Made by a program: the position numbers and the translations under genes. From Octopus bimaculoides (taxonomy: Eukaryota), in NCBI RefSeq assembly GCF_001194135.2, contig NC_068981.1:8701873-8765872 (forward strand): a stretch of 64,000 nucleotides of DNA, in the 5' to 3' direction. The notes beneath the pieces are model-generated. The model had not been told where the DNA came from, made no database searches, and saw only the letters and a program-made list of their open reading frames with translations. Positions 4,611 to 50,591 of the stretch are shown here, one piece after another. Numbering within the stretch: the first letter of the stretch is position 1; every line of letters starts with the position of its first letter.

Positions 4611-4651
4611 AATGTATAAGTTTCGGTTTTATTAAACCTCTTCAGTAAAAC
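4611..4651 (-). ncRNA. Minimal type I hammerhead ribozyme motif, stems I and III degenerate
   Basis: Minus strand reads GUUUUA-CUGAAGA-GGUUU-AAUA-AAACC-GAAAC-UUA-UACA. Core intact and 5-bp stem II perfect. Confidence 0.6.
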
Positions 4652-32388: not shown

Positions 32389-32944
32389 AGTGTGTGTGTG
32401 TGTGTGTGAACAGGAGATTGGAAAACGTTTTGGGTTTTATTTATTCACCATTACATGTGTTTCTTTTACTAATAGGACTTACAAAATTGTACGTGTGGAA
32501 GAAACATGTAAGACATTTATTAGAAACTCTTCAGACAGAATATCAAGCAGTCATATATGTACACAATATACATATATATATATATACGTTATGTATGTGT
32601 GGATGGATATAAGTATATAGAATGTATGCATGTGTGTGTTTGTGTATTAAGTATGCGTGCATGCATGTATATATAGTTGTATGTATATAGGTATACATGC
32701 TTGTTGGTCTCACTCAGTTTTCTTATTATGGGTCCTTTAATCTAAACAATCTGATTGTTCCTAAGAACGTGCCACCCTAAAAAAATATGTTTATTTTATT
32801 GTGAAAGTTATGTATTAGAGCAGTTAACGACAGCTAGTACGCCAAAACTTTGTCAGAGTCAACCTGGTCCTCATAAGTATATACGTGCACATACACACAA
32901 ACACACACACACACACATGTATACGCATATACATATATGAATAC

Positions 32945-33098
<154 letters not shown>

Positions 33099-34230: not shown

Positions 34231-34298
34231 GTGAGTAACGAGTGTATATACCATATTTCAGGGGTTGTTGCCCCTTCATCAGCACTCATCTAACTCAC
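34231..34298 (-). ncRNA. Type I hammerhead ribozyme, fully paired
   Basis: Reads GUGAGU-UAG-AUGAGUG-CUGAUGA-AGGGG-CAACAA-CCCCU-GAA-AUAU-GGU-AUAU-A/CACUCGU-U-ACUCAC. Complete core, 5-bp stem II, 4-bp stem III, and 7+6-bp stem I with an internal loop. Confidence 0.88.
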
Positions 34299-41374: not shown

Positions 41375-41895
41375 CACACAGAGGCGCATACACACACACA
41401 CACACACACATGCACACTTACCTATCACACACACAAAGTTAAACAGTAACTGCATGGCTGAAGTAGTTGCAGCTGACTCTCAGTTTTGAGTCGTGACTGC
41501 ATGGTTGCCAGGAGCAGAATGAAACAGTGTCATGTGGTTGGCCAAAAGAAACACGACATTCCTCGAGGGCGGCGTCCATCTTGTGGGAGATAAAGGAGAG
41601 AGTGGCAGCAATGGAACGGACTGGAAATGTCAGTCGTCAACAGGAAATGAAGGGATTATCCCCTAATATAGATTGCATAGGAAATACAAATTAAACAGTG
41701 TGCATGTATATATGTATTCATGTATGTATGTATGTATGTATGTATGTATATGTGTATGTATATATATATACATACACACACATACATGCACACACATACA
41801 TACACACACATACATACATACATACATACATACATACGTACATATACACACATACGTACATACGCACACACATACATACACACACACATACATAC

Positions 41896-42310
41896 ATCTT
41901 TTGTTATTTCCTTGTTTCAGTCATTTGACAGCGAAATGAATCGACCCCAGAAATTATTTATTGCTATTCTTAAGCCTGGTACTTATTCTTTTCTATTCTA
42001 GGCAGAAGACCTAAAATTTGGGGGGAGGGGGTCAGTCGATTAGATCGATCCCAGTACGCAACTGGTACTTAATTTATCGACCCCGGAAGGATGAAAAGCA
42101 AAGTTGACCTGGGTGGAATTTGAACTCAGAATGTAAAGACAGACGAAATGCCGCTAAGCATTTCGCCCGGCGTGCTAACCATTCTGCCAGCTCACCGCCT
42201 TAGCGTCATTTATTCTATCGGTTCATTTGTCGAACCGATAAGTTACAGCGATAACACAAAACACCTGTTGTCAAGCGCTGGTGGGGGAAAAACACAGTCT
42301 CGCACACACG

Positions 42311-42564: not shown

Positions 42565-42815
42565 TCACGTGATCAGTGACCGATCAGGCTATCAGATGCT
42601 GTTACACATCGCTGGTCACAATGCGCTTTTTGCATTGTTTTAGCCTCAAATGACGCCACCCCGCGTGCTAGGCGAGCAGGCCAACACCCACTTCCTGATC
42701 AAAAGGGACACTTGGGCAACGTGAAATGAAATGTTTTGCTCAAGAACGCAACGTACAGCCCAATCCGGGAATCGAACCTACGATCTAGCGATCGTGAGTG
42801 CAACAACCTAACCAC
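42565..42815 (-). mobile_element. tRNA-derived SINE, third family
   Basis: Reverse complement reads GTGGTTAGGTTG..CACTCACGATCGCTAGATCGTAGGTTCGATTCCCGG..GTTGCGTTCTTGAGCAAAAC (A and B boxes). Confidence 0.8.
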
Positions 42816-43002
42816 ATGTATATGTACATGTATGTAATGTAGTCGTTGGTTATGACCGATCAGAAAGTAACCATTGGCTTCACTTCTCTTATTACTCTTA
42901 TCAATATAGGCGACACATCAGACCTGCTGGCTGGAGGCACAGAACCTCTTTACTAATCATTAATAAAGAGCTCATGTGCCTCTTTATATGTGTGTGTGTG
43001 TG

Positions 43003-43065
43003 ATGGAATCGTAGGTTCGATTCCCTGATTGGGCAGTGCGTTGTGTTCTTGAGAAAAACTCTTCA
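43003..43065 (+). mobile_element. SINE 5' fragment, third family
   Basis: TCGTAGGTTCGATTCCC..GCGTTGTGTTCTTGAGAAAA. Confidence 0.6.
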
Positions 43066-43079
43066 TATATATATATCTA

Positions 43080-43114
<35 letters not shown>

Positions 43115-43495
43115 NNNNNNNNNNNNNNNNNNNNNNNNNNNNNNNNNNNNNNNNNNNNNNNNNNNNNNNNNNNNNNNNNNNNNNNNNNNNNNNNNNNNNN
43201 NNNNNNNNNNNNNNNNNNNNNNNNNNNNNNNNNNNNNNNNNNNNNNNNNNNNNNNNNNNNNNNNNNNNNNNNNNNNNNNNNNNNNNNNNNNNNNNNNNNN
43301 NNNNNNNNNNNNNNNNNNNNNNNNNNNNNNNNNNNNNNNNNNNNNNNNNNNNNNNNNNNNNNNNNNNNNNNNNNNNNNNNNNNNNNNNNNNNNNNNNNNN
43401 NNNNNNNNNNNNNNNNNNNNNNNNNNNNNNNNNNNNNNNNNNNNNNNNNNNNNNNNNNNNNNNNNNNNNNNNNNNNNNNNNNNNNNNNNNNNNNN

Positions 43496-43731
43496 GAAGA
43501 AAAGAAAGGTAGTTTTTACGTTTCGAGCAAAGCTCTTCGTCAGAAACAAGAGACGGATGCTATATATATATATACATTCCCCAAAAACGAACAAACAAGA
43601 GAAAAAAATCTCGAGGACGTGGTACATGCAAAGTATTAGTAGACGCTCAGGGAAGAAAAGAAAGGTAGTTTTTACGTTTCGAGCAAAGCTCTTCGTCAGA
43701 AACAAGAGACGGATGCTATATATATATATAC
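43496..43731 (-). ncRNA. Tandem hammerhead ribozyme unit (156-nt period), candidate non-LTR retrozyme
   Basis: Identical 80-bp repeats at 43496-43575 and 43652-43731. Each reads UUGUUU-CUGACGA-A-GAGC-UUU-GCUC-GAAACGUA/AAAAC, with cores at 43537-43543 and 43693-43699. Confidence 0.8.
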
Positions 43732-43789
43732 GCGATGGAATATCGAGTCGAAGCCGACGTATGAGTGTTCAGTTTTGCTGAACGTCCTG

Positions 43790-44018
43790 CACAAATGATT
43801 TGTTTCTAGTGATCCAATGTATGTGCTGTACATTCGCTCATTCCACTAACTCAAGGTTGCTTGTAGCAAGAGCATGGTGTACCGCACGTCAGGAGTTGAA
43901 GCGATCATAGAGCAATGTGAGATGAAGGGTCTTGCTCAAGAACACAACGCTCCGCACTGTCCAAGAATCAAAACCACGATCTCGCGATCGTGAATGCAAC
44001 ACTCTACCCATGTGGCTA
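43790..44018 (-). mobile_element. tRNA-derived SINE, third family
   Basis: CTTGCTCAAGAACACAACGC..AATCAAAACCACGATCTCGCGATCGTGAATGCAACAC. Confidence 0.75.
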
Positions 44019-44396
44019 TCGTAACAGAAGGCTGGAAAAATTTGGTTTCTTTTTAATTGCATGTTACACGTGTTTCATCACGAGACAGACATCCAAACCT
44101 AATACGACCTTTTAATCTTTGAAGAATCACAGATAGGAGATCCTATACATGTTTTTTTTTCTACATGTGCACCTTTGTAACTCCTATCCTGTAATGAAAC
44201 ATGTGCAGCATGGAATTAAAAATATACCAAACTTATTCCAGTCGTCTCATTTGATTTTAGTGAATTACTCTCCAAATCGAATTCACTAGAAATTTCAAAT
44301 GTTAATCTCATGCGAATAAAATATCTAAATACACACATTGGATTGATGTGAACGATGTGGTACACGACGACACAGCTTCGATTAGAACCTCTTATA

Positions 44397-47769: not shown

Positions 47770-49600
47770 TGAAATAAAGTTTAAGTTAACTCGAAAACGT
47801 TAGAACATTCCTCGTCTGCTGCGTATTCATTCTGGCAATGAGCCTTTCGAGGCACAAGTCTACAGGCCATAAAATGAATGCAGACATTTCCAGAAATATT
47901 AACACCTGTCCCTGTGATCGTTGCTAATTCTTTTTCTTCAGCTGTTATGTGTACATCTTCTCTAGGATAGGATATAGGCCATTATAATTAACTTTTTTTT
48001 CAAGAATTCTTTCAGTTTGTCAATGAAATTCTCACCATTTGTTACTATAAAGGACACTGAAATCTGTTTGAGGCTTTTAATTTTAAAAACTTTTTATTTT
48101 GATCGTAAACAAAAAAACGTTGTCATTCCTACGAACGACAAACATCAAGATAGTTGAAAGCTTATTGCTTTTAGGCTAGGTGTGATAGTAGTGGCTGTCA
48201 TGAATTTCTTGATGTTAACTGGTCACTGTGTGTTTTAGTCGCTGTCCGTCCATTGTTTTTGTGTTGTGACTGCGCTTTGGCCAGCTGCTGGTTCTGCTAC
48301 TGTCGTGATCCTGCTCACAAAAAGGGTGCCAAAGATGAAACTGTTGCTAGATCCGGTTCCACATGAAATTTTGAATGGTCAGATCTATTTATCGTGATCG
48401 TATTCTTGAATTGCACTTTTTTTTTTTTTTTTTGCATCGGATATGGTGATCCGGGTTCCATTGCTAAATATTCGTGCAGTATTTTTTTGTTTACTATAAA
48501 AATAAATATTTCTTTATTAAAAATCTCAAACAGAATTCTGTATTCCTTACCATATCACAACTACAGGAGTTGTCAAAGTCATGGAAGGTTAGGAATTTGC
48601 TTCGTAAAAATAGGTTTCGGTTTCAGTCTCACTGGTCGACGTTTTGAATTGAAACTTTCTTCTCTAAATAACTGAAGGATTGGTCTATTTATTGTATGAC
48701 ATATTAGTTGAGATTTGCCTGTGTTACAGACGAGAAATGAAAAAGGGAGATAATTTCAGTAAATTCTCTCAAAGTTAATCTTGGTACCCACCAAAACTTT
48801 GTGGGTGAAACTGTTAAATAGAAACTATGTTGAAGCCTGGCAGAGAAACCATTAGCGTTGTTGTGTGGTAGACTTAATCCATTGCCAGGTTTCGCATCAC
48901 CACCTTGCCTTTGGTCTGACATACGTAGCCTCCTTGAATTTGAACCCCACCCTCTCTGTTGAATCGCCAGTATTCTACCGATTCGGTGATCCGAACAGAT
49001 TTTTATAGATTTCACATTTATTTCAGAATTTCTGCAATTAATTTTTTTTTAAATGCTTTCAAAGAAATGCTAGAGTGCCGTACTAAATGTCTTATACTAG
49101 CTCTGCTTTTTTCTGACTTCAAATCTCGATCTATACTCCGAGTATTTGTTTATCGATGCCAATAGAATAGACTCGAGTTATATTGCATTGTTACAACTTG
49201 ATCAACATTTCTGTCATCAAAAACACTCCGGCTGTGACCGATTTTTCAATCATTGTACACTATTAAAGGTATCCTTCCTTTTTTAAAATTTTTATAGAGA
49301 TGGAGATTTAGCTGGTATTACTATCAAGTCAGTTATCTCGTTCACTTATATATTCTGGTATCGATATTCTTGCACATTTTATGGATTCTAGTGTTGTCTT
49401 AGATTAAAAGGAACTAGAATTTCTTTCAGTTTGGTGAACAAGTCTGATCCAGGCCGAGTGAAAGTCTGATGCAAGGGCCCTGCGAAATTGGACCCCATAG
49501 AACACGAACCACTGATTCTTCGGCTTGATGGCTTCATGCAGAATCGATGCAGCCTCTCCATGTTCTATATATTTTCTTGCAAACAAACAAAACGAATTTA
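47770..49600 (-). mobile_element. Possible highly degenerate L1/Tx1-like LINE
   Basis: Only scattered motif echoes (KQILGV, REGG) in A-rich, stop-riddled frames. Confidence 0.25.
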
Positions 49601-50430
49601 CATGGTATGTTGATCTGTTTGATTCTGACAGAGAAATTCAGGTAAAAAAAAGTTTAAAAGGTTCGGGAGGAAGAAATTTCACGAGATGATAGGGGCAGTA
49701 TTGAACTCACAACTCAAACTTTAAAAAATTCAAGTATAGAACAACACAACCATTTTGTCAGGAAAACAATTCGACTGTATCGATATCGATAGAAAAATGA
49801 AACTTCAAACAGAACAACAACAAAAACATAGCGCTGGATTAACCATGCAAGATGGGGGGCACCATAGAAATGGTAAAGGTTTACGGCACAAAAGAAATCA
49901 CTTTAAATTTGCTAAAGTAATATTCGCTATGATAACTGGTGTCATGGTGTCAAAGCGAGGATCTGATCAAAGAATTTACATTTAAAACAATAGGAGAATA
50001 GTTGATATGCAAGATAAATAAAATGGAAGTATACAGAAATAAACATGATTTTTCCTTTTGCCGTTAGTTTTGTTTCTTTTTGAAAAGTATAAATTATTTT
50101 ATGGATTATTATTGTTTATATTCATGAGGGCACGAAAATCTTTTAAGTGCTGAAGCCTTTTATGGGTCTCAACCCTAACCCTGCAACAACGGCAGCATAA
50201 CAAACAACAATAACAACATTAACAGAAACAGTAAAAAAAAACAGTAATGTCTAGTTGACATTGACCTTCCGATGTTTAGAATGGAGATCTGCTTAACAGG
50301 TTGAAATTAATATTGTAGATATAAGTTGGAGTAGGGAACAGGAAAATGCCCCATATATTTTTCCTATTGTCTCTCTAGTACTCTCCAGTGCTCCCTCTCT
50401 CTGTTTCTTTTTCCCTCTCTTCTTTTATCT

Positions 50431-50502
50431 TCTCTTTCTCACGAGACTCCAATAAATCCGAAACGTCAAAACATCCCTTCTTTCTTCAGCGTAAAACTAA
50501 TA
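50431..50502 (+). ncRNA. Degenerate hammerhead-like motif, same family as 21.4 and 43.6 kb
   Basis: Reads CUCUUU-CUCACGA-...-GAAACGUC-AAAAC...AGCGUAAAACUAAUA. G5 is changed to C and stem II is broken. Confidence 0.5.
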
Positions 50503-50591
50503 ACAGGTATCGTCTTATTTCTTTATATTGCTCTTCTTCATTTCATTTCACTTTTGAATATACATATGTATATATGTGTGTGTGTGTGTGT

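What the first reader, a model, noticed from the sequence alone, without database searches (positions are those of the whole stretch)
43496..43731. Tandem hammerhead ribozymes 156 nt apart in a (TA)n-bounded unit: candidate cephalopod retrozyme / circular RNA system
Seen: an 80-bp sequence is repeated exactly at 43496 and 43652. On the minus strand each copy reads CUGACGA-A-GAGC/UUU/GCUC-GAAACGUA. This is an intact hammerhead core with an extra A after A9, a 4-bp stem II and a self-complementary ACGU in place of stem III. The unit is non-coding, begins after (TA)7 and runs into a 381-N gap whose other side is (TA)n, so more units may be collapsed. Established: minimal type I HHRs with palindromic stem III occur in Penelope-like elements and non-LTR retrozymes, work as dimers in tandem transcripts and release monomers that can circularise. 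Inference: cleavage at 43673/43672 and 43517/43516 would release a 156-nt monomer, a non-autonomous element possibly mobilised by PLE RT and favouring (TA)n. Caveat: stem I is weak (3 A-U pairs plus one G-C across a bulge).
Basis: partly seen in the sequence, partly recalled or inferred. Interest (0 to 1): 0.85.

Follow-up and report, generated by a model that had tools for sequence, protein, structure and literature searches.

The report
Penelope-type minimal hammerhead in short retroposon
A short non-coding repeat in what looks like an octopus genome carries two identical copies of a stripped-down hammerhead ribozyme motif of the kind already described in Penelope-like retrotransposons. It is a credible but ordinary member of that class, and neither self-cleavage nor circular RNA has been shown.

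Summary
An exact 80-nt repeat lies at 43496-43575 and 43652-43731, 156 nt apart, and the first copy abuts a 381-N gap. On the minus strand each copy reads UUU-CUGACGA-A-GAGC/UUU/GCUC-GAAA-CGU-A|AAA.

This matches point by point the 'minimal hammerhead' (min-HHR) of Penelope-like elements (Cervera & de la Pena 2014). It has no helix III, a palindromic 15.2-16.2, an extra base between A9 and G10.1, a G10.1-C11.1 pair and a short helix I. A descriptor for this motif is expected 0.007 times per window by chance.

Two decayed relatives lie at 21357-21536 and about 50359-50557. The majority sequence of the three core boxes is the intact CUGACGA. All three copies end 90-97 nt past the predicted cleavage site, against a TA-rich microsatellite, and their 5' extents vary. 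That is the pattern of a retroposon inserting into (TA)n.

Against an active retrozyme:
- No Rfam hammerhead model matches.
- Helix I is three A-U pairs.
- The double-hammerhead fold scores +2.2 kcal/mol against an MFE of -47.9.
- Only 1.5 units are assembled, and TRF does not call them a tandem repeat.
- Published min-HHRs cleave poorly.

Verdict: a new member of a known kind. Interest is low to moderate.

The parts
43652..43731 (-). 80-nt repeat copy; the 5' (upstream) copy on the sense (minus) strand: (TA)7, a 17-nt leader, the min-HHR and 21 nt beyond it
   Evidence: D3, 100% identical to 43496-43575
43670..43702 (-). Upstream minimal hammerhead: UUU (helix I 5'), CUGACGA, extra A, GAGC-UUU-GCUC (helix II), GAAA, CGU, A17, AAA (helix I 3'). 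Predicted cleavage 43673|43672
   Evidence: descriptor hit; core box 43676-43699
43576..43651 (-). 76-nt spacer between the two repeat copies. It holds the second family-conserved block, GAGCGUCUACUAAUAC, and the 3' terminal segment ...UUCGUUUUUGGGGAAU that abuts the inner (TA)7
43496..43575 (-). 80-nt repeat copy; the 3' (downstream) copy on the sense strand, cut off by the gap
   Evidence: gap edge
43514..43546 (-). Downstream minimal hammerhead, identical to the upstream one. Predicted cleavage 43517|43516
43717..43730 (.). (TA)7 at the 5' boundary of the upstream unit
43561..43574 (.). (TA)7 at the junction between the two units; same length as the outer tract
43115..43495 (.). 381-N assembly gap on the sense-strand 3' side. 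It could hide at most about 2.4 further units
43065..43114 (.). (TA)n microsatellite (25 units, 91% matches) beyond the gap; probable 3' target-site tract
21357..21536 (+). Decayed family copy C2. Hammerhead relic at 21414-21447: UUU-CAGUUGA-A-GAGC-GUAC-GCUC-GAAACGU-U-AAA, with U4 and A6 mutated. It starts at a gap edge and ends against (TA)13 at 21537-21562, 93 nt after the site
50359..50557 (+). Decayed family copy C3. Hammerhead relic at 50435-50470: UUU-CUCACGA-...-GAAACGU-C-AAA, with G5 mutated and helix II lost. It is preceded by ATATAT and ends against a TA/TG microsatellite 90 nt after the site

Best explanation
The locus holds one and a half head-to-tail units of a short retroposon (about 140-215 bp), either non-autonomous or 5'-truncated. 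The retroposon carries a Penelope-like-element (PLE) type minimal hammerhead ribozyme and sits in (TA)n microsatellites.

Shown:
- The motif, with every published min-HHR hallmark.
- A dispersed family of at least three loci in 64 kb.
- A fixed 3' end 90-97 nt past the predicted cleavage site, always against a TA-rich tract.
- Variable 5' extents (17, about 50 and about 85 nt before the hammerhead).
- No room for a PLE ORF at this locus: at most 236 + 381 nt lie between unrelated flanks.

Inferred:
- The family derives from the pLTR / 3' end of a (TA)n-targeting PLE, Neptune-like in behaviour. It was copied by target-primed reverse transcription using a PLE RT/GIY-YIG endonuclease supplied in trans or by a full-length parent.
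- The tandem arose either by unequal exchange or slippage between the flanking (TA)n tracts, or by the partial-tandem insertion typical of PLEs. The inner junction repeats the outer (TA)7 and the same 5' truncation point exactly.
- If a transcript spans both units, the two ACGU palindromes could pair into a 4-bp intermolecular helix III. That would form a double hammerhead that cleaves after GUA and frees a 156-nt RNA.
- I expect this activity to be weak or factor-dependent, and circularisation is speculative.
For: - Exact repeat and motif.
- Descriptor expected by chance 0.007 per window.
- Match to the published min-HHR definition. That definition is no helix III/loop 3, palindromic 15.2-16.2, a conserved extra base between 9 and 10.1, G10.1-C11.1, helix I of 4-5 bp (2 bp in D. 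virilis), mostly solo copies attributed to truncated PLEs: PMC4209133.
- Family: the composite signature GAAACGT-N15-30-AGCGT-N1-6-CTAATA hits exactly three loci against 0 expected. BLAST of C2 against the unit gives E=7e-5.
- The majority rule of the three core boxes (CUGACGA, CAGUUGA, CUCACGA) is the intact CUGACGA.
- Helix I UUU/AAA, GAAACGU and a non-G base at position 17 (A, U, C) are kept in all three copies.
- The hammerhead segment is better conserved than the flanks for M-C2 (79% against 58% and 42%) and M-C3 (68% against 58% and 36%).
- The 3' ends lie 97, 93 and 90 nt from the site, each against a TA-rich tract.
- (TA)n targeting is documented for Naiad and proposed for Neptune PLEs: PMC8557442.
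- PLEs are abundant and recently active in octopus genomes: PMC13282606 and PMC8967140. The window looks octopod.
- Retrozymes are now argued to be pLTR-derived non-autonomous PLEs with consensus lengths of 51-972 bp: preprint 10.64898/2026.07.22.740005.
Against: - No Rfam hammerhead family matches at the gathering score or at E<=10 on 43400-43900.
- Helix I is only three A-U pairs, and helix II is 4 bp, whereas many PLE min-HHRs have 6-8 bp.
- The double-hammerhead fold evaluates to +2.2 kcal/mol against an MFE of -47.9, which is dominated by (UA)7:(UA)7 pairing and by hairpins that sequester GACG and GAAA.
- The circular monomer is no more stable than shuffles (z = -0.23).
- There are no compensatory changes among the three copies, and both relatives have lethal core substitutions.
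- A block outside the hammerhead (AGCGUnnnACUAAUA) is conserved as well as the hammerhead itself. Between C2 and C3 the hammerhead segment is no better conserved than the flanks.
- No PLE RT or endonuclease was found in the ten ORFs tested, and no full-length parent could be searched for.
- The first copy starts at a gap edge, in an assembly that has at least one other gap-edge duplication.
Confidence: 0.68

Rival explanations
1. Active mini-retrozyme. The locus is part of a longer collapsed tandem array of 156-nt monomers. Its transcripts self-cleave as double hammerheads, the 156-nt monomers are ligated into circles, and rolling-circle reverse transcription by a PLE RT makes new tandem insertions in (TA)n.
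For: - Two complete, identical min-HHRs lie 156 nt apart on one strand.
- The unit size and 38% GC fall within published retrozyme ranges of 150-450 bp and below 45% GC, or 51-972 bp (GC).
- The contig breaks at the repeat, as expected for a collapsed array.
- C2 upstream of its hammerhead resembles the 3' part of the M spacer (T7-8 CTC(C)TTGTTT), hinting at more than one unit there too.
- The 2026 pipeline accepts minimal hammerhead models.
Against: - TRF does not call a repeat at 1.5 units.
- The gap estimate allows at most about 2.4 more units.
- The unit junction carries (TA)7 exactly where solo copies have their 3' end and target tract. That points to a linear template with defined ends plus DNA-level duplication.
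- Retrozymes as first defined carry canonical hammerheads with loop-loop contacts.
- Min-HHRs have low in-vitro activity.
- For the one PLE studied biochemically, cleavage was dispensable and no RNA-seq ends mapped to the site (PMC11167929).
- The active fold is energetically disfavoured.
Confidence: 0.15
2. Fortuitous hammerhead look-alike. The family is an ordinary T/C-rich SINE-like or LINE-tail retroposon, mobilised for example by a microsatellite-specific non-LTR element. The M copy happens to spell CUGACGA...GAAA.
For: - No Rfam hit.
- Only one of three loci has an intact core.
- A non-hammerhead block is equally conserved.
- Helix I is weak and the energetics are unfavourable.
- A chance rate of 0.007 per 64 kb scales to hundreds of hits per multi-Gb genome, and the finding was selected by eye for looking like a hammerhead.
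- Dong-R4 and other LINEs are abundant in octopus. That some members of that clade target microsatellites is from my own knowledge and was not checked here.
Against: - The motif also shows features the descriptor did not require but that are specific to PLE min-HHRs: a G10.1-C11.1 closing pair and the extra base at 9/10.1.
- Helix I UUU/AAA and a non-G base at position 17 are conserved in all three copies.
- The three-copy majority restores the intact core.
- The hammerhead segment is the best-conserved stretch between M and C2.
Confidence: 0.12
3. The tandem is an assembly artefact. The genome has one unit at this locus, and the second 80-nt copy comes from mis-extension at a contig end (reads from another family copy or the other haplotype). 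This rival concerns only the tandem arrangement and is compatible with the best explanation for the motif.
For: - The first copy begins at the first base after the gap, and the two copies are 100% identical, including the mutable (TA)7 length.
- The same assembly has a 281-nt, 98.2% identical duplication straddling the gap at 13558-13702.
Against: - Both copies lie in one contig with 76 nt of unique sequence between them, so reads spanning the join from the 80-nt copy into the spacer must exist somewhere in the genome.
- The known artefact at 13.5 kb has a different topology, with copies on opposite sides of the gap.
- Only 2 of 17 gaps show any non-simple edge duplication.
Confidence: 0.2

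Closest known systems
Minimal hammerhead ribozymes (min-HHR) of Penelope-like elements (Cervera & de la Pena 2014, PMC4209133; Lunse, Weinberg & Breaker 2017, known to me only through citation in PMC6765202)
   Same: Type I topology. No helix III or loop 3, with a palindromic 15.2-16.2 so that two copies must pair. An unpaired extra base between A9 and G10.1. A G10.1-C11.1 pair. Short, poorly defined helix I. Mostly dispersed solo copies with heavy sequence decay. Low-GC context.
   Different: Helix II is only 4 bp with a UUU loop, whereas Schistosoma and Drosophila PLE versions have 6-8 bp. The dimeric helix III would be only 4 bp (ACGU). No PLE ORF or pLTR context could be shown here. No covariation is available from three copies.
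Non-LTR retrozymes of metazoans (Cervera & de la Pena 2020, PMC7229834; Li, Clavereau & Pollet 2026 preprint 10.64898/2026.07.22.740005)
   Same: Short non-coding unit (156 nt, 38% GC) with one type I hammerhead per unit. Two consecutive units each have a complete motif. Presumed dependence on PLE machinery.
   Different: The original definition rests on canonical hammerheads with loop 1-loop 2 contacts and efficient cleavage. Here the motif is minimal. Only 1.5 units are assembled, with no TRF call. A microsatellite sits at the unit junction. Expression and circles are untested.
(TA)n-targeting PLE clades: Neptune (carries hammerheads) and Naiad (lacks canonical hammerheads) (Craig et al. 2021, PMC8557442)
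   Same: Insertion bias for (TA)n. Partial tandem structures. 5'-truncated copies. Cephalopods carry PLE families.
   Different: No RT or endonuclease sequence links this family to either clade. Naiads lack canonical hammerheads, so a Neptune-like or Penelope/Poseidon-like parent would be needed.
Sm-alpha / Sj-alpha SINE-like elements of Schistosoma and the newt satellite 2 repeats (as summarised in PMC6765202 and PMC7229834)
   Same: Short non-autonomous repeats carrying a type I hammerhead with a weak helix III that works as a dimer in tandem transcripts.
   Different: Those carry canonical cores with loop-loop contacts. The Schistosoma SINE-like elements also have an upstream promoter (PMC6765202). 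No promoter boxes were looked for or seen here, and the unit is much shorter.

Membership tests
Hammerhead ribozyme (any type) | Conserved core boxes C3-U4-G5-A6-N7-G8-A9 and G12-A13-A14, with A15.1-U16.1 and a non-G base at position 17 | tested here: met
   CUGACGA ... GAAA-CGU-A on the minus strand of both copies
Hammerhead ribozyme (any type) | Helix II closed by G10.1-C11.1 | tested here: met
   GAGC-UUU-GCUC, 4 bp, predicted as a hairpin in every fold. It is kept in copy C2 with a different loop, GUAC
Hammerhead ribozyme (any type) | Helix I able to close the three-way junction | tested here: inconclusive
   Only U2.1-2.3 / A1.1-1.3, then a G/A mismatch. The pairs are conserved but invariant in the three copies
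Hammerhead ribozyme (any type) | Match to a curated covariance model (Rfam Hammerhead families) | tested here: not met
   No match at gathering scores over the whole window, nor at E<=10 on 43400-43900. None is among the 150 listed sub-threshold hits for the window. A miss might be expected if those models require a helix III hairpin, but I did not inspect the models
Hammerhead ribozyme (any type) | Site-specific self-cleavage | not testable with these tools
   Needs in-vitro transcription of monomer and dimer constructs
PLE-type min-HHR (Cervera & de la Pena 2014) | No helix III or loop 3; positions 15.2-16.2 palindromic so that two motifs form an extended helix III | tested here: met
   GAAA-CG-UA; ACGU is self-complementary. 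Definition
PLE-type min-HHR (Cervera & de la Pena 2014) | [quoted passage not shown] | tested here: met
   A between A9 and G10.1 in M and C2. Feature listed
PLE-type min-HHR (Cervera & de la Pena 2014) | Genome-wide consensus families rich in covariation and compensatory changes | tested here: inconclusive
   Only three loci are reachable. The majority core is intact but no compensatory change is seen. External scans found nothing
PLE-type min-HHR (Cervera & de la Pena 2014) | Location in the pLTR of an element encoding RT and GIY-YIG endonuclease | tested here: not met
   At this locus at most about 617 nt lie between unrelated flanks, and ten ORFs of the window have no Pfam domain. Whether a full-length parent exists elsewhere in the genome is not testable here. 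The published class consists mostly of such solo copies
Non-LTR retrozyme | Tandem repeat (TRF call) with at least two consecutive units, each holding a complete hammerhead (Li et al. 2026 criterion) | tested here: inconclusive
   Two complete motifs lie 156 nt apart. TRF, with the published parameters and with relaxed ones, reports no repeat because only 1.5 units are assembled. The gap hides the rest
Non-LTR retrozyme | Canonical type I hammerhead with typical helix sizes and loop 1-loop 2 tertiary contacts (Cervera & de la Pena 2020) | tested here: not met
   The motif is of the minimal type, with no loop 1 and a 3-nt loop 2. Definition
Non-LTR retrozyme | Monomer of roughly 150-450 bp with low GC | tested here: met
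   156 nt, 38% GC
Non-LTR retrozyme | Expression as linear and circular monomeric RNA | not testable with these tools
   No transcriptome is available. The circular monomer fold is not unusually stable (z = -0.23)

The most novel reading that the evidence does not exclude
The 156-nt unit is a working mini-retrozyme, among the smallest known in an invertebrate and, as far as the library I could search shows, the first described in a cephalopod. It is built on a minimal rather than a canonical hammerhead. Its monomer carries its own (UA)n tract. After cleavage and circularisation, that tract anneals to nicked (TA)n microsatellites to prime reverse transcription, which would explain both the target preference and the TA tract at every unit boundary.
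Probability: 0.1. Interest if true: 0.55.

Novelty: new member of a known kind. Interest (0 to 1): 0.3.

Why it matters
If the motif is active, it extends ribozyme-bearing PLE derivatives to cephalopods. It would also give a compact case (156 nt, 4-bp helices II and III) for asking how minimal hammerheads work in vivo, which is still unresolved. The fixed 3' end against (TA)n in three copies is a small, clean data point on microsatellite targeting by this class. As it stands, the finding adds an expected member to a class already reported as massively widespread in metazoan genomes. It does not open a new question.

Tried and rejected
- **Rfam at gathering and at permissive thresholds.** No hammerhead match. 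The sub-threshold hits are microsatellite-driven miRNA false positives.
- **Fishing for more family copies outside the window.** Two metagenome scans were run. One search used a pattern I had made too strict, which did not even match the unit itself. One search returned one locus, L001, whose local sequence shows no resemblance to the family beyond the pattern itself, so I take it as a chance match. One viral-contig scan found nothing.
- **Protein search with the + strand frame that stays open through the 52-codon period.** The hope was that gene callers had translated other copies. No hit.
- **Reaching octopus contigs through transposon-protein hits.** One protein was not on record and the other sat on a 743-bp contig.
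- **nhmmer profile of the three copies against the window.** No further significant member. The borderline hit at 47784-47820 was inspected and rejected.
- **Other CTGANGA...GAAAC hits** at 4620, 22498, 34282, 37015 and 46492. None has a valid helix III plus a non-G base at position 17, and none shows homology to the unit.
- **Pfam scan of ten gap-free ORFs for PLE RT or endonuclease.** Nothing.
- **ARAGORN.** No tRNA.
- **A full-length PLE at this locus.** Rejected, because there is no room between the flanks.
- **Two independent insertions as the origin of the tandem.** Rejected, because the two units share the same 5' truncation point and the same (TA)7 length.

Full report
**Observation**

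The window contains an exact 80-nt direct repeat at 43496-43575 and 43652-43731, with start-to-start spacing of 156 nt. The first copy starts at the first base after a 381-N gap, 43115-43495. On the far side of the gap is a (TA)n tract at 43065-43114.

Read on the minus strand, each copy is G(UA)7-GCAUCCGUCUCUUG-UUU-CUGACGA-A-GAGC-UUU-GCUC-GAAA-CGU-A|AAA-ACUACC.... The description is therefore accurate.

**Is it more than chance?**

I wrote a descriptor that requires:
- CUGANGA;
- 0-1 extra base;
- a helix II of at least 4 bp with a 3-10-nt loop;
- GAAA;
- a palindrome of 2-6 nt after A15.1;
- U16.1 and a non-G base at position 17.

It finds only these two sites in the window. In 2000 dinucleotide-preserving shuffles it averaged 0.007 hits per window. 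The looser pattern CTGANGA-N8-24-GAAAC occurs 6 times against 0.67 expected.

The two copies are a single duplication, so this counts as one motif. A rate of 0.007 per 64 kb still allows hundreds of chance matches in a multi-Gb genome, so the motif by itself is suggestive and not conclusive.

**What class of hammerhead is it?**

No Rfam hammerhead model matches, either at gathering scores or at E<=10 on the local 500 nt. The literature describes exactly this architecture, however. Cervera and de la Pena (2014, PMC4209133) defined the 'min-HHR' of Penelope-like elements (PLEs). Its features are:
- no helix III or loop 3, only the conserved bases, so that two copies must pair;
- palindromic positions 15.2-16.2;
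- a conserved unpaired base between 9 and 10.1;
- a G10.1-C11.1 pair;
- a short, ill-defined helix I (4-5 bp, and only 2 bp in Drosophila virilis);
- occurrence mostly as dispersed single motifs ascribed to truncated PLEs;
- low cleavage activity in vitro, even as dimers.

The candidate shows every one of the structural features. The differences are a helix II of only 4 bp and a dimeric helix III that would be only 4 bp.

**Family context inside the window**

BLAST and pattern searches found two diverged relatives:
- C2 at 21357-21536 (+), reading UUU-CAGUUGA-A-GAGC-GUAC-GCUC-GAAACGU-U-AAA.
- C3 at about 50359-50557 (+), reading UUU-CUCACGA-...-GAAACGU-C-AAA.

A composite signature, GAAACGT-N15-30-AGCGT-N1-6-CTAATA, hits exactly these three loci with none expected. 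Both relatives carry substitutions at essential core positions: U4 and A6 in C2, and G5 in C3. Even so, the majority rule of the three boxes is the intact CUGACGA. Helix I (UUU/AAA), GAAACGU and a non-G base at position 17 (A, U, C) are kept in all three copies.

| Pair | Hammerhead segment | 3' flank | 5' flank |
|---|---|---|---|
| M-C2 | 79% | 58% | 42% |
| M-C3 | 68% | 58% | 36% |
| C2-C3 | 59% | 59% | 64% |

These identities are; M is the unit at 43.5 kb. The hammerhead is therefore better conserved than the flanks for two of the three pairs. A second block outside the hammerhead (AGCGUnnnACUAAUA) is equally conserved. With three copies there is no covariation test. I read this as an old hammerhead-bearing family whose inserted copies decay, with M the youngest. 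The support is moderate, not strong.

**Ends and target**

In all three loci the sense strand runs 97, 93 and 90 nt past the predicted cleavage site and then meets a TA-rich microsatellite:
- (TA)7 in M, with (TA)25 beyond the gap;
- (TA)13 in C2;
- ATATACATATGTATATATG... in C3.

M and C3 share a terminal UUYRYUUUUG(GGG)AAU. Upstream, the copies begin after short TA remnants and extend 17, about 50 and about 85 nt before the hammerhead. A fixed 3' end, a variable 5' end and a microsatellite on both sides form the signature of target-primed reverse transcription into (TA)n. (TA)n bias is documented for Naiad PLEs and attributed to a zinc-finger linker in Neptune PLEs (PMC8557442). The association of gaps with microsatellites is general in this assembly, so the gap itself says little.

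**What the tandem means**

The inner junction repeats the outer boundary exactly, with the same (TA)7 and the same 17-nt leader. Two independent insertions are therefore excluded.

The junction lies where solo copies have their ends, not at the cleavage/ligation site. This fits two origins at least as well as reverse transcription of a circle:
- unequal exchange or slippage between the flanking (TA)n tracts;
- PLE-style partial-tandem insertion.

A monomer that includes its own (UA)n is not excluded. Only 1.5 units are assembled. TRF does not report a repeat with either the published retrozyme-pipeline parameters or relaxed ones. The gap estimate leaves room for about 2.4 more units.

An assembly artefact cannot be dismissed. 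The copy starts at the gap edge, and the same assembly has a 281-nt, 98.2% duplication straddling the gap at 13558-13702. That case has a different topology, though. Here both copies are in one contig with unique sequence between them, so reads joining the 80-nt copy to the spacer must exist.

**Activity**

Nearest-neighbour folding predicts helix II. It otherwise favours three competing pairings:
- an upstream CGUC with the core GACG;
- a hairpin that sequesters GAAA and the cleavage site;
- in the dimer, pairing of the two (UA)7 tracts.

The domain-swapped double-hammerhead evaluates to +2.2 kcal/mol against an MFE of -47.9. The circular monomer is no more stable than shuffles (z = -0.23). 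These models ignore tertiary contacts, so they do not exclude activity.

Three published results point the same way. Min-HHRs cleave poorly. For the one PLE reconstituted in vitro, cleavage was dispensable, and no RNA-seq ends mapped to its site (PMC11167929). I therefore put efficient self-cleavage and circle formation at roughly 15%.

**Comparison with known systems and membership**

The motif passes the sequence-level tests for a hammerhead core and for the PLE min-HHR subclass. It fails the Rfam model test and the pLTR-of-an-ORF context at this locus: there is no room for an ORF, and ten ORFs had no RT or endonuclease domain.

As a non-LTR retrozyme the record is mixed:
- It meets the size and GC criteria.
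- It holds two complete motifs in consecutive units.
- It fails the canonical-hammerhead criterion of the original definition (PMC7229834).
- It is not called as a tandem repeat as assembled.

A 2026 preprint argues that animal retrozymes are pLTR-derived non-autonomous PLEs, with consensus lengths from 51 to 972 bp and many solo monomers. Under that view the distinction between 'truncated PLE end' and 'mini-retrozyme' is one of degree, and this locus sits on the boundary.

**Organism and novelty**

A transposon ORF at 13.7 kb is 89% identical to an Octopus bimaculoides protein. PLEs are abundant and recently active in octopus genomes.

In the library available to me, only two distinct papers came up for 'hammerhead ribozyme' together with 'cephalopod'. 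One is a PLE survey and the other is a study of twister ribozymes. A description in cephalopods would therefore probably be new in detail.

The class has been reported as massive and widespread across metazoans since 2014. I rate this a new member of a known kind, with interest of about 0.3.

**What failed**

All attempts to reach more family copies outside the window came back empty: metagenome and viral pattern scans, a protein search with the open frame of the unit, and contig look-ups. The decisive test is a genome-wide family alignment plus a search for a full-length parent, and it could not be run here.

Noticed in passing
window 13277-13557 and 13703-13983 (gap 13558-13702 between them): A 281-nt segment is duplicated on either side of an assembly gap at 98.2% identity (276/281). 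This is either an unmerged haplotype or overlap artefact, or a real tandem. It encodes the C-terminal part of a transposon protein (CFLIDVSIPADDNV...IIVGALG...LLGTAHILRKTL). That protein is 89% identical to Octopus bimaculoides A0A0L8I0U5 and about 60% identical to uncharacterised proteins of shrimp, coral and beetle.
   Followed up: partly
window 42703-42823 (-), 43008-43066 (+), 43899-44019 (-): Three copies of a repeat that looks like a tRNA-derived SINE (a GGTTCGATTCCC box-B-like segment) surround the hammerhead locus. Two form a 59-nt, 88% inverted pair. ARAGORN calls no tRNA.
   Followed up: partly
window 4620-4645 (-): A second hammerhead-like core with a good helix II (CUGAAGA-GGUUU-AAUA-AAACC-GAAAC). 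It lacks a valid helix III or cleavage triplet and has no helix I, and it shows no detectable homology to the 43.5-kb unit. It may be a decayed hammerhead of another family.
   Followed up: partly
window 34246-34282 (-): CUGAUGA-AGGGG-CAACAA-CCCCU-GAAA followed by UAUG. The core and a 5-bp helix II are present, but position 17 would be G, so it is not a valid hammerhead.
   Followed up: no
window, all 17 N gaps: Many gaps are bounded on at least one side by a microsatellite: (TA)n at 693, 2790, 22903, 27997, 43115 and 52096; (CA)n or (TG)n at 1185, 27082, 44657, 57293 and 62880. Gap placement therefore reflects simple repeats in general.
   Followed up: yes
window 43497-43730 (+), frame 2 of the repeat: The + strand frame is open through the whole 236 nt, and the 156-nt period is exactly 52 codons, so an array would read as one long ORF. 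The product is low-complexity (KKRKVVFTFRAKLF...) and has no homologue in the 5.8-billion-protein collection. I regard it as fortuitous.
   Followed up: yes
window 44038-44088 and 44184-44234: An inverted repeat with 51-nt arms (78% complementary) and a 95-nt spacer lies just downstream of the SINE-like copy. It looks like a MITE or a hairpin.
   Followed up: no
window-wide (e.g. 41720-41897, 32872-32998, 51006-51216, 60026-60177): There are many sub-threshold Rfam hits to miRNA families (mir-297, mir-466, mir-3149, mir-5014). All lie on (TG/TA)-type microsatellites and all score below gathering, so they are false positives.
   Followed up: yes
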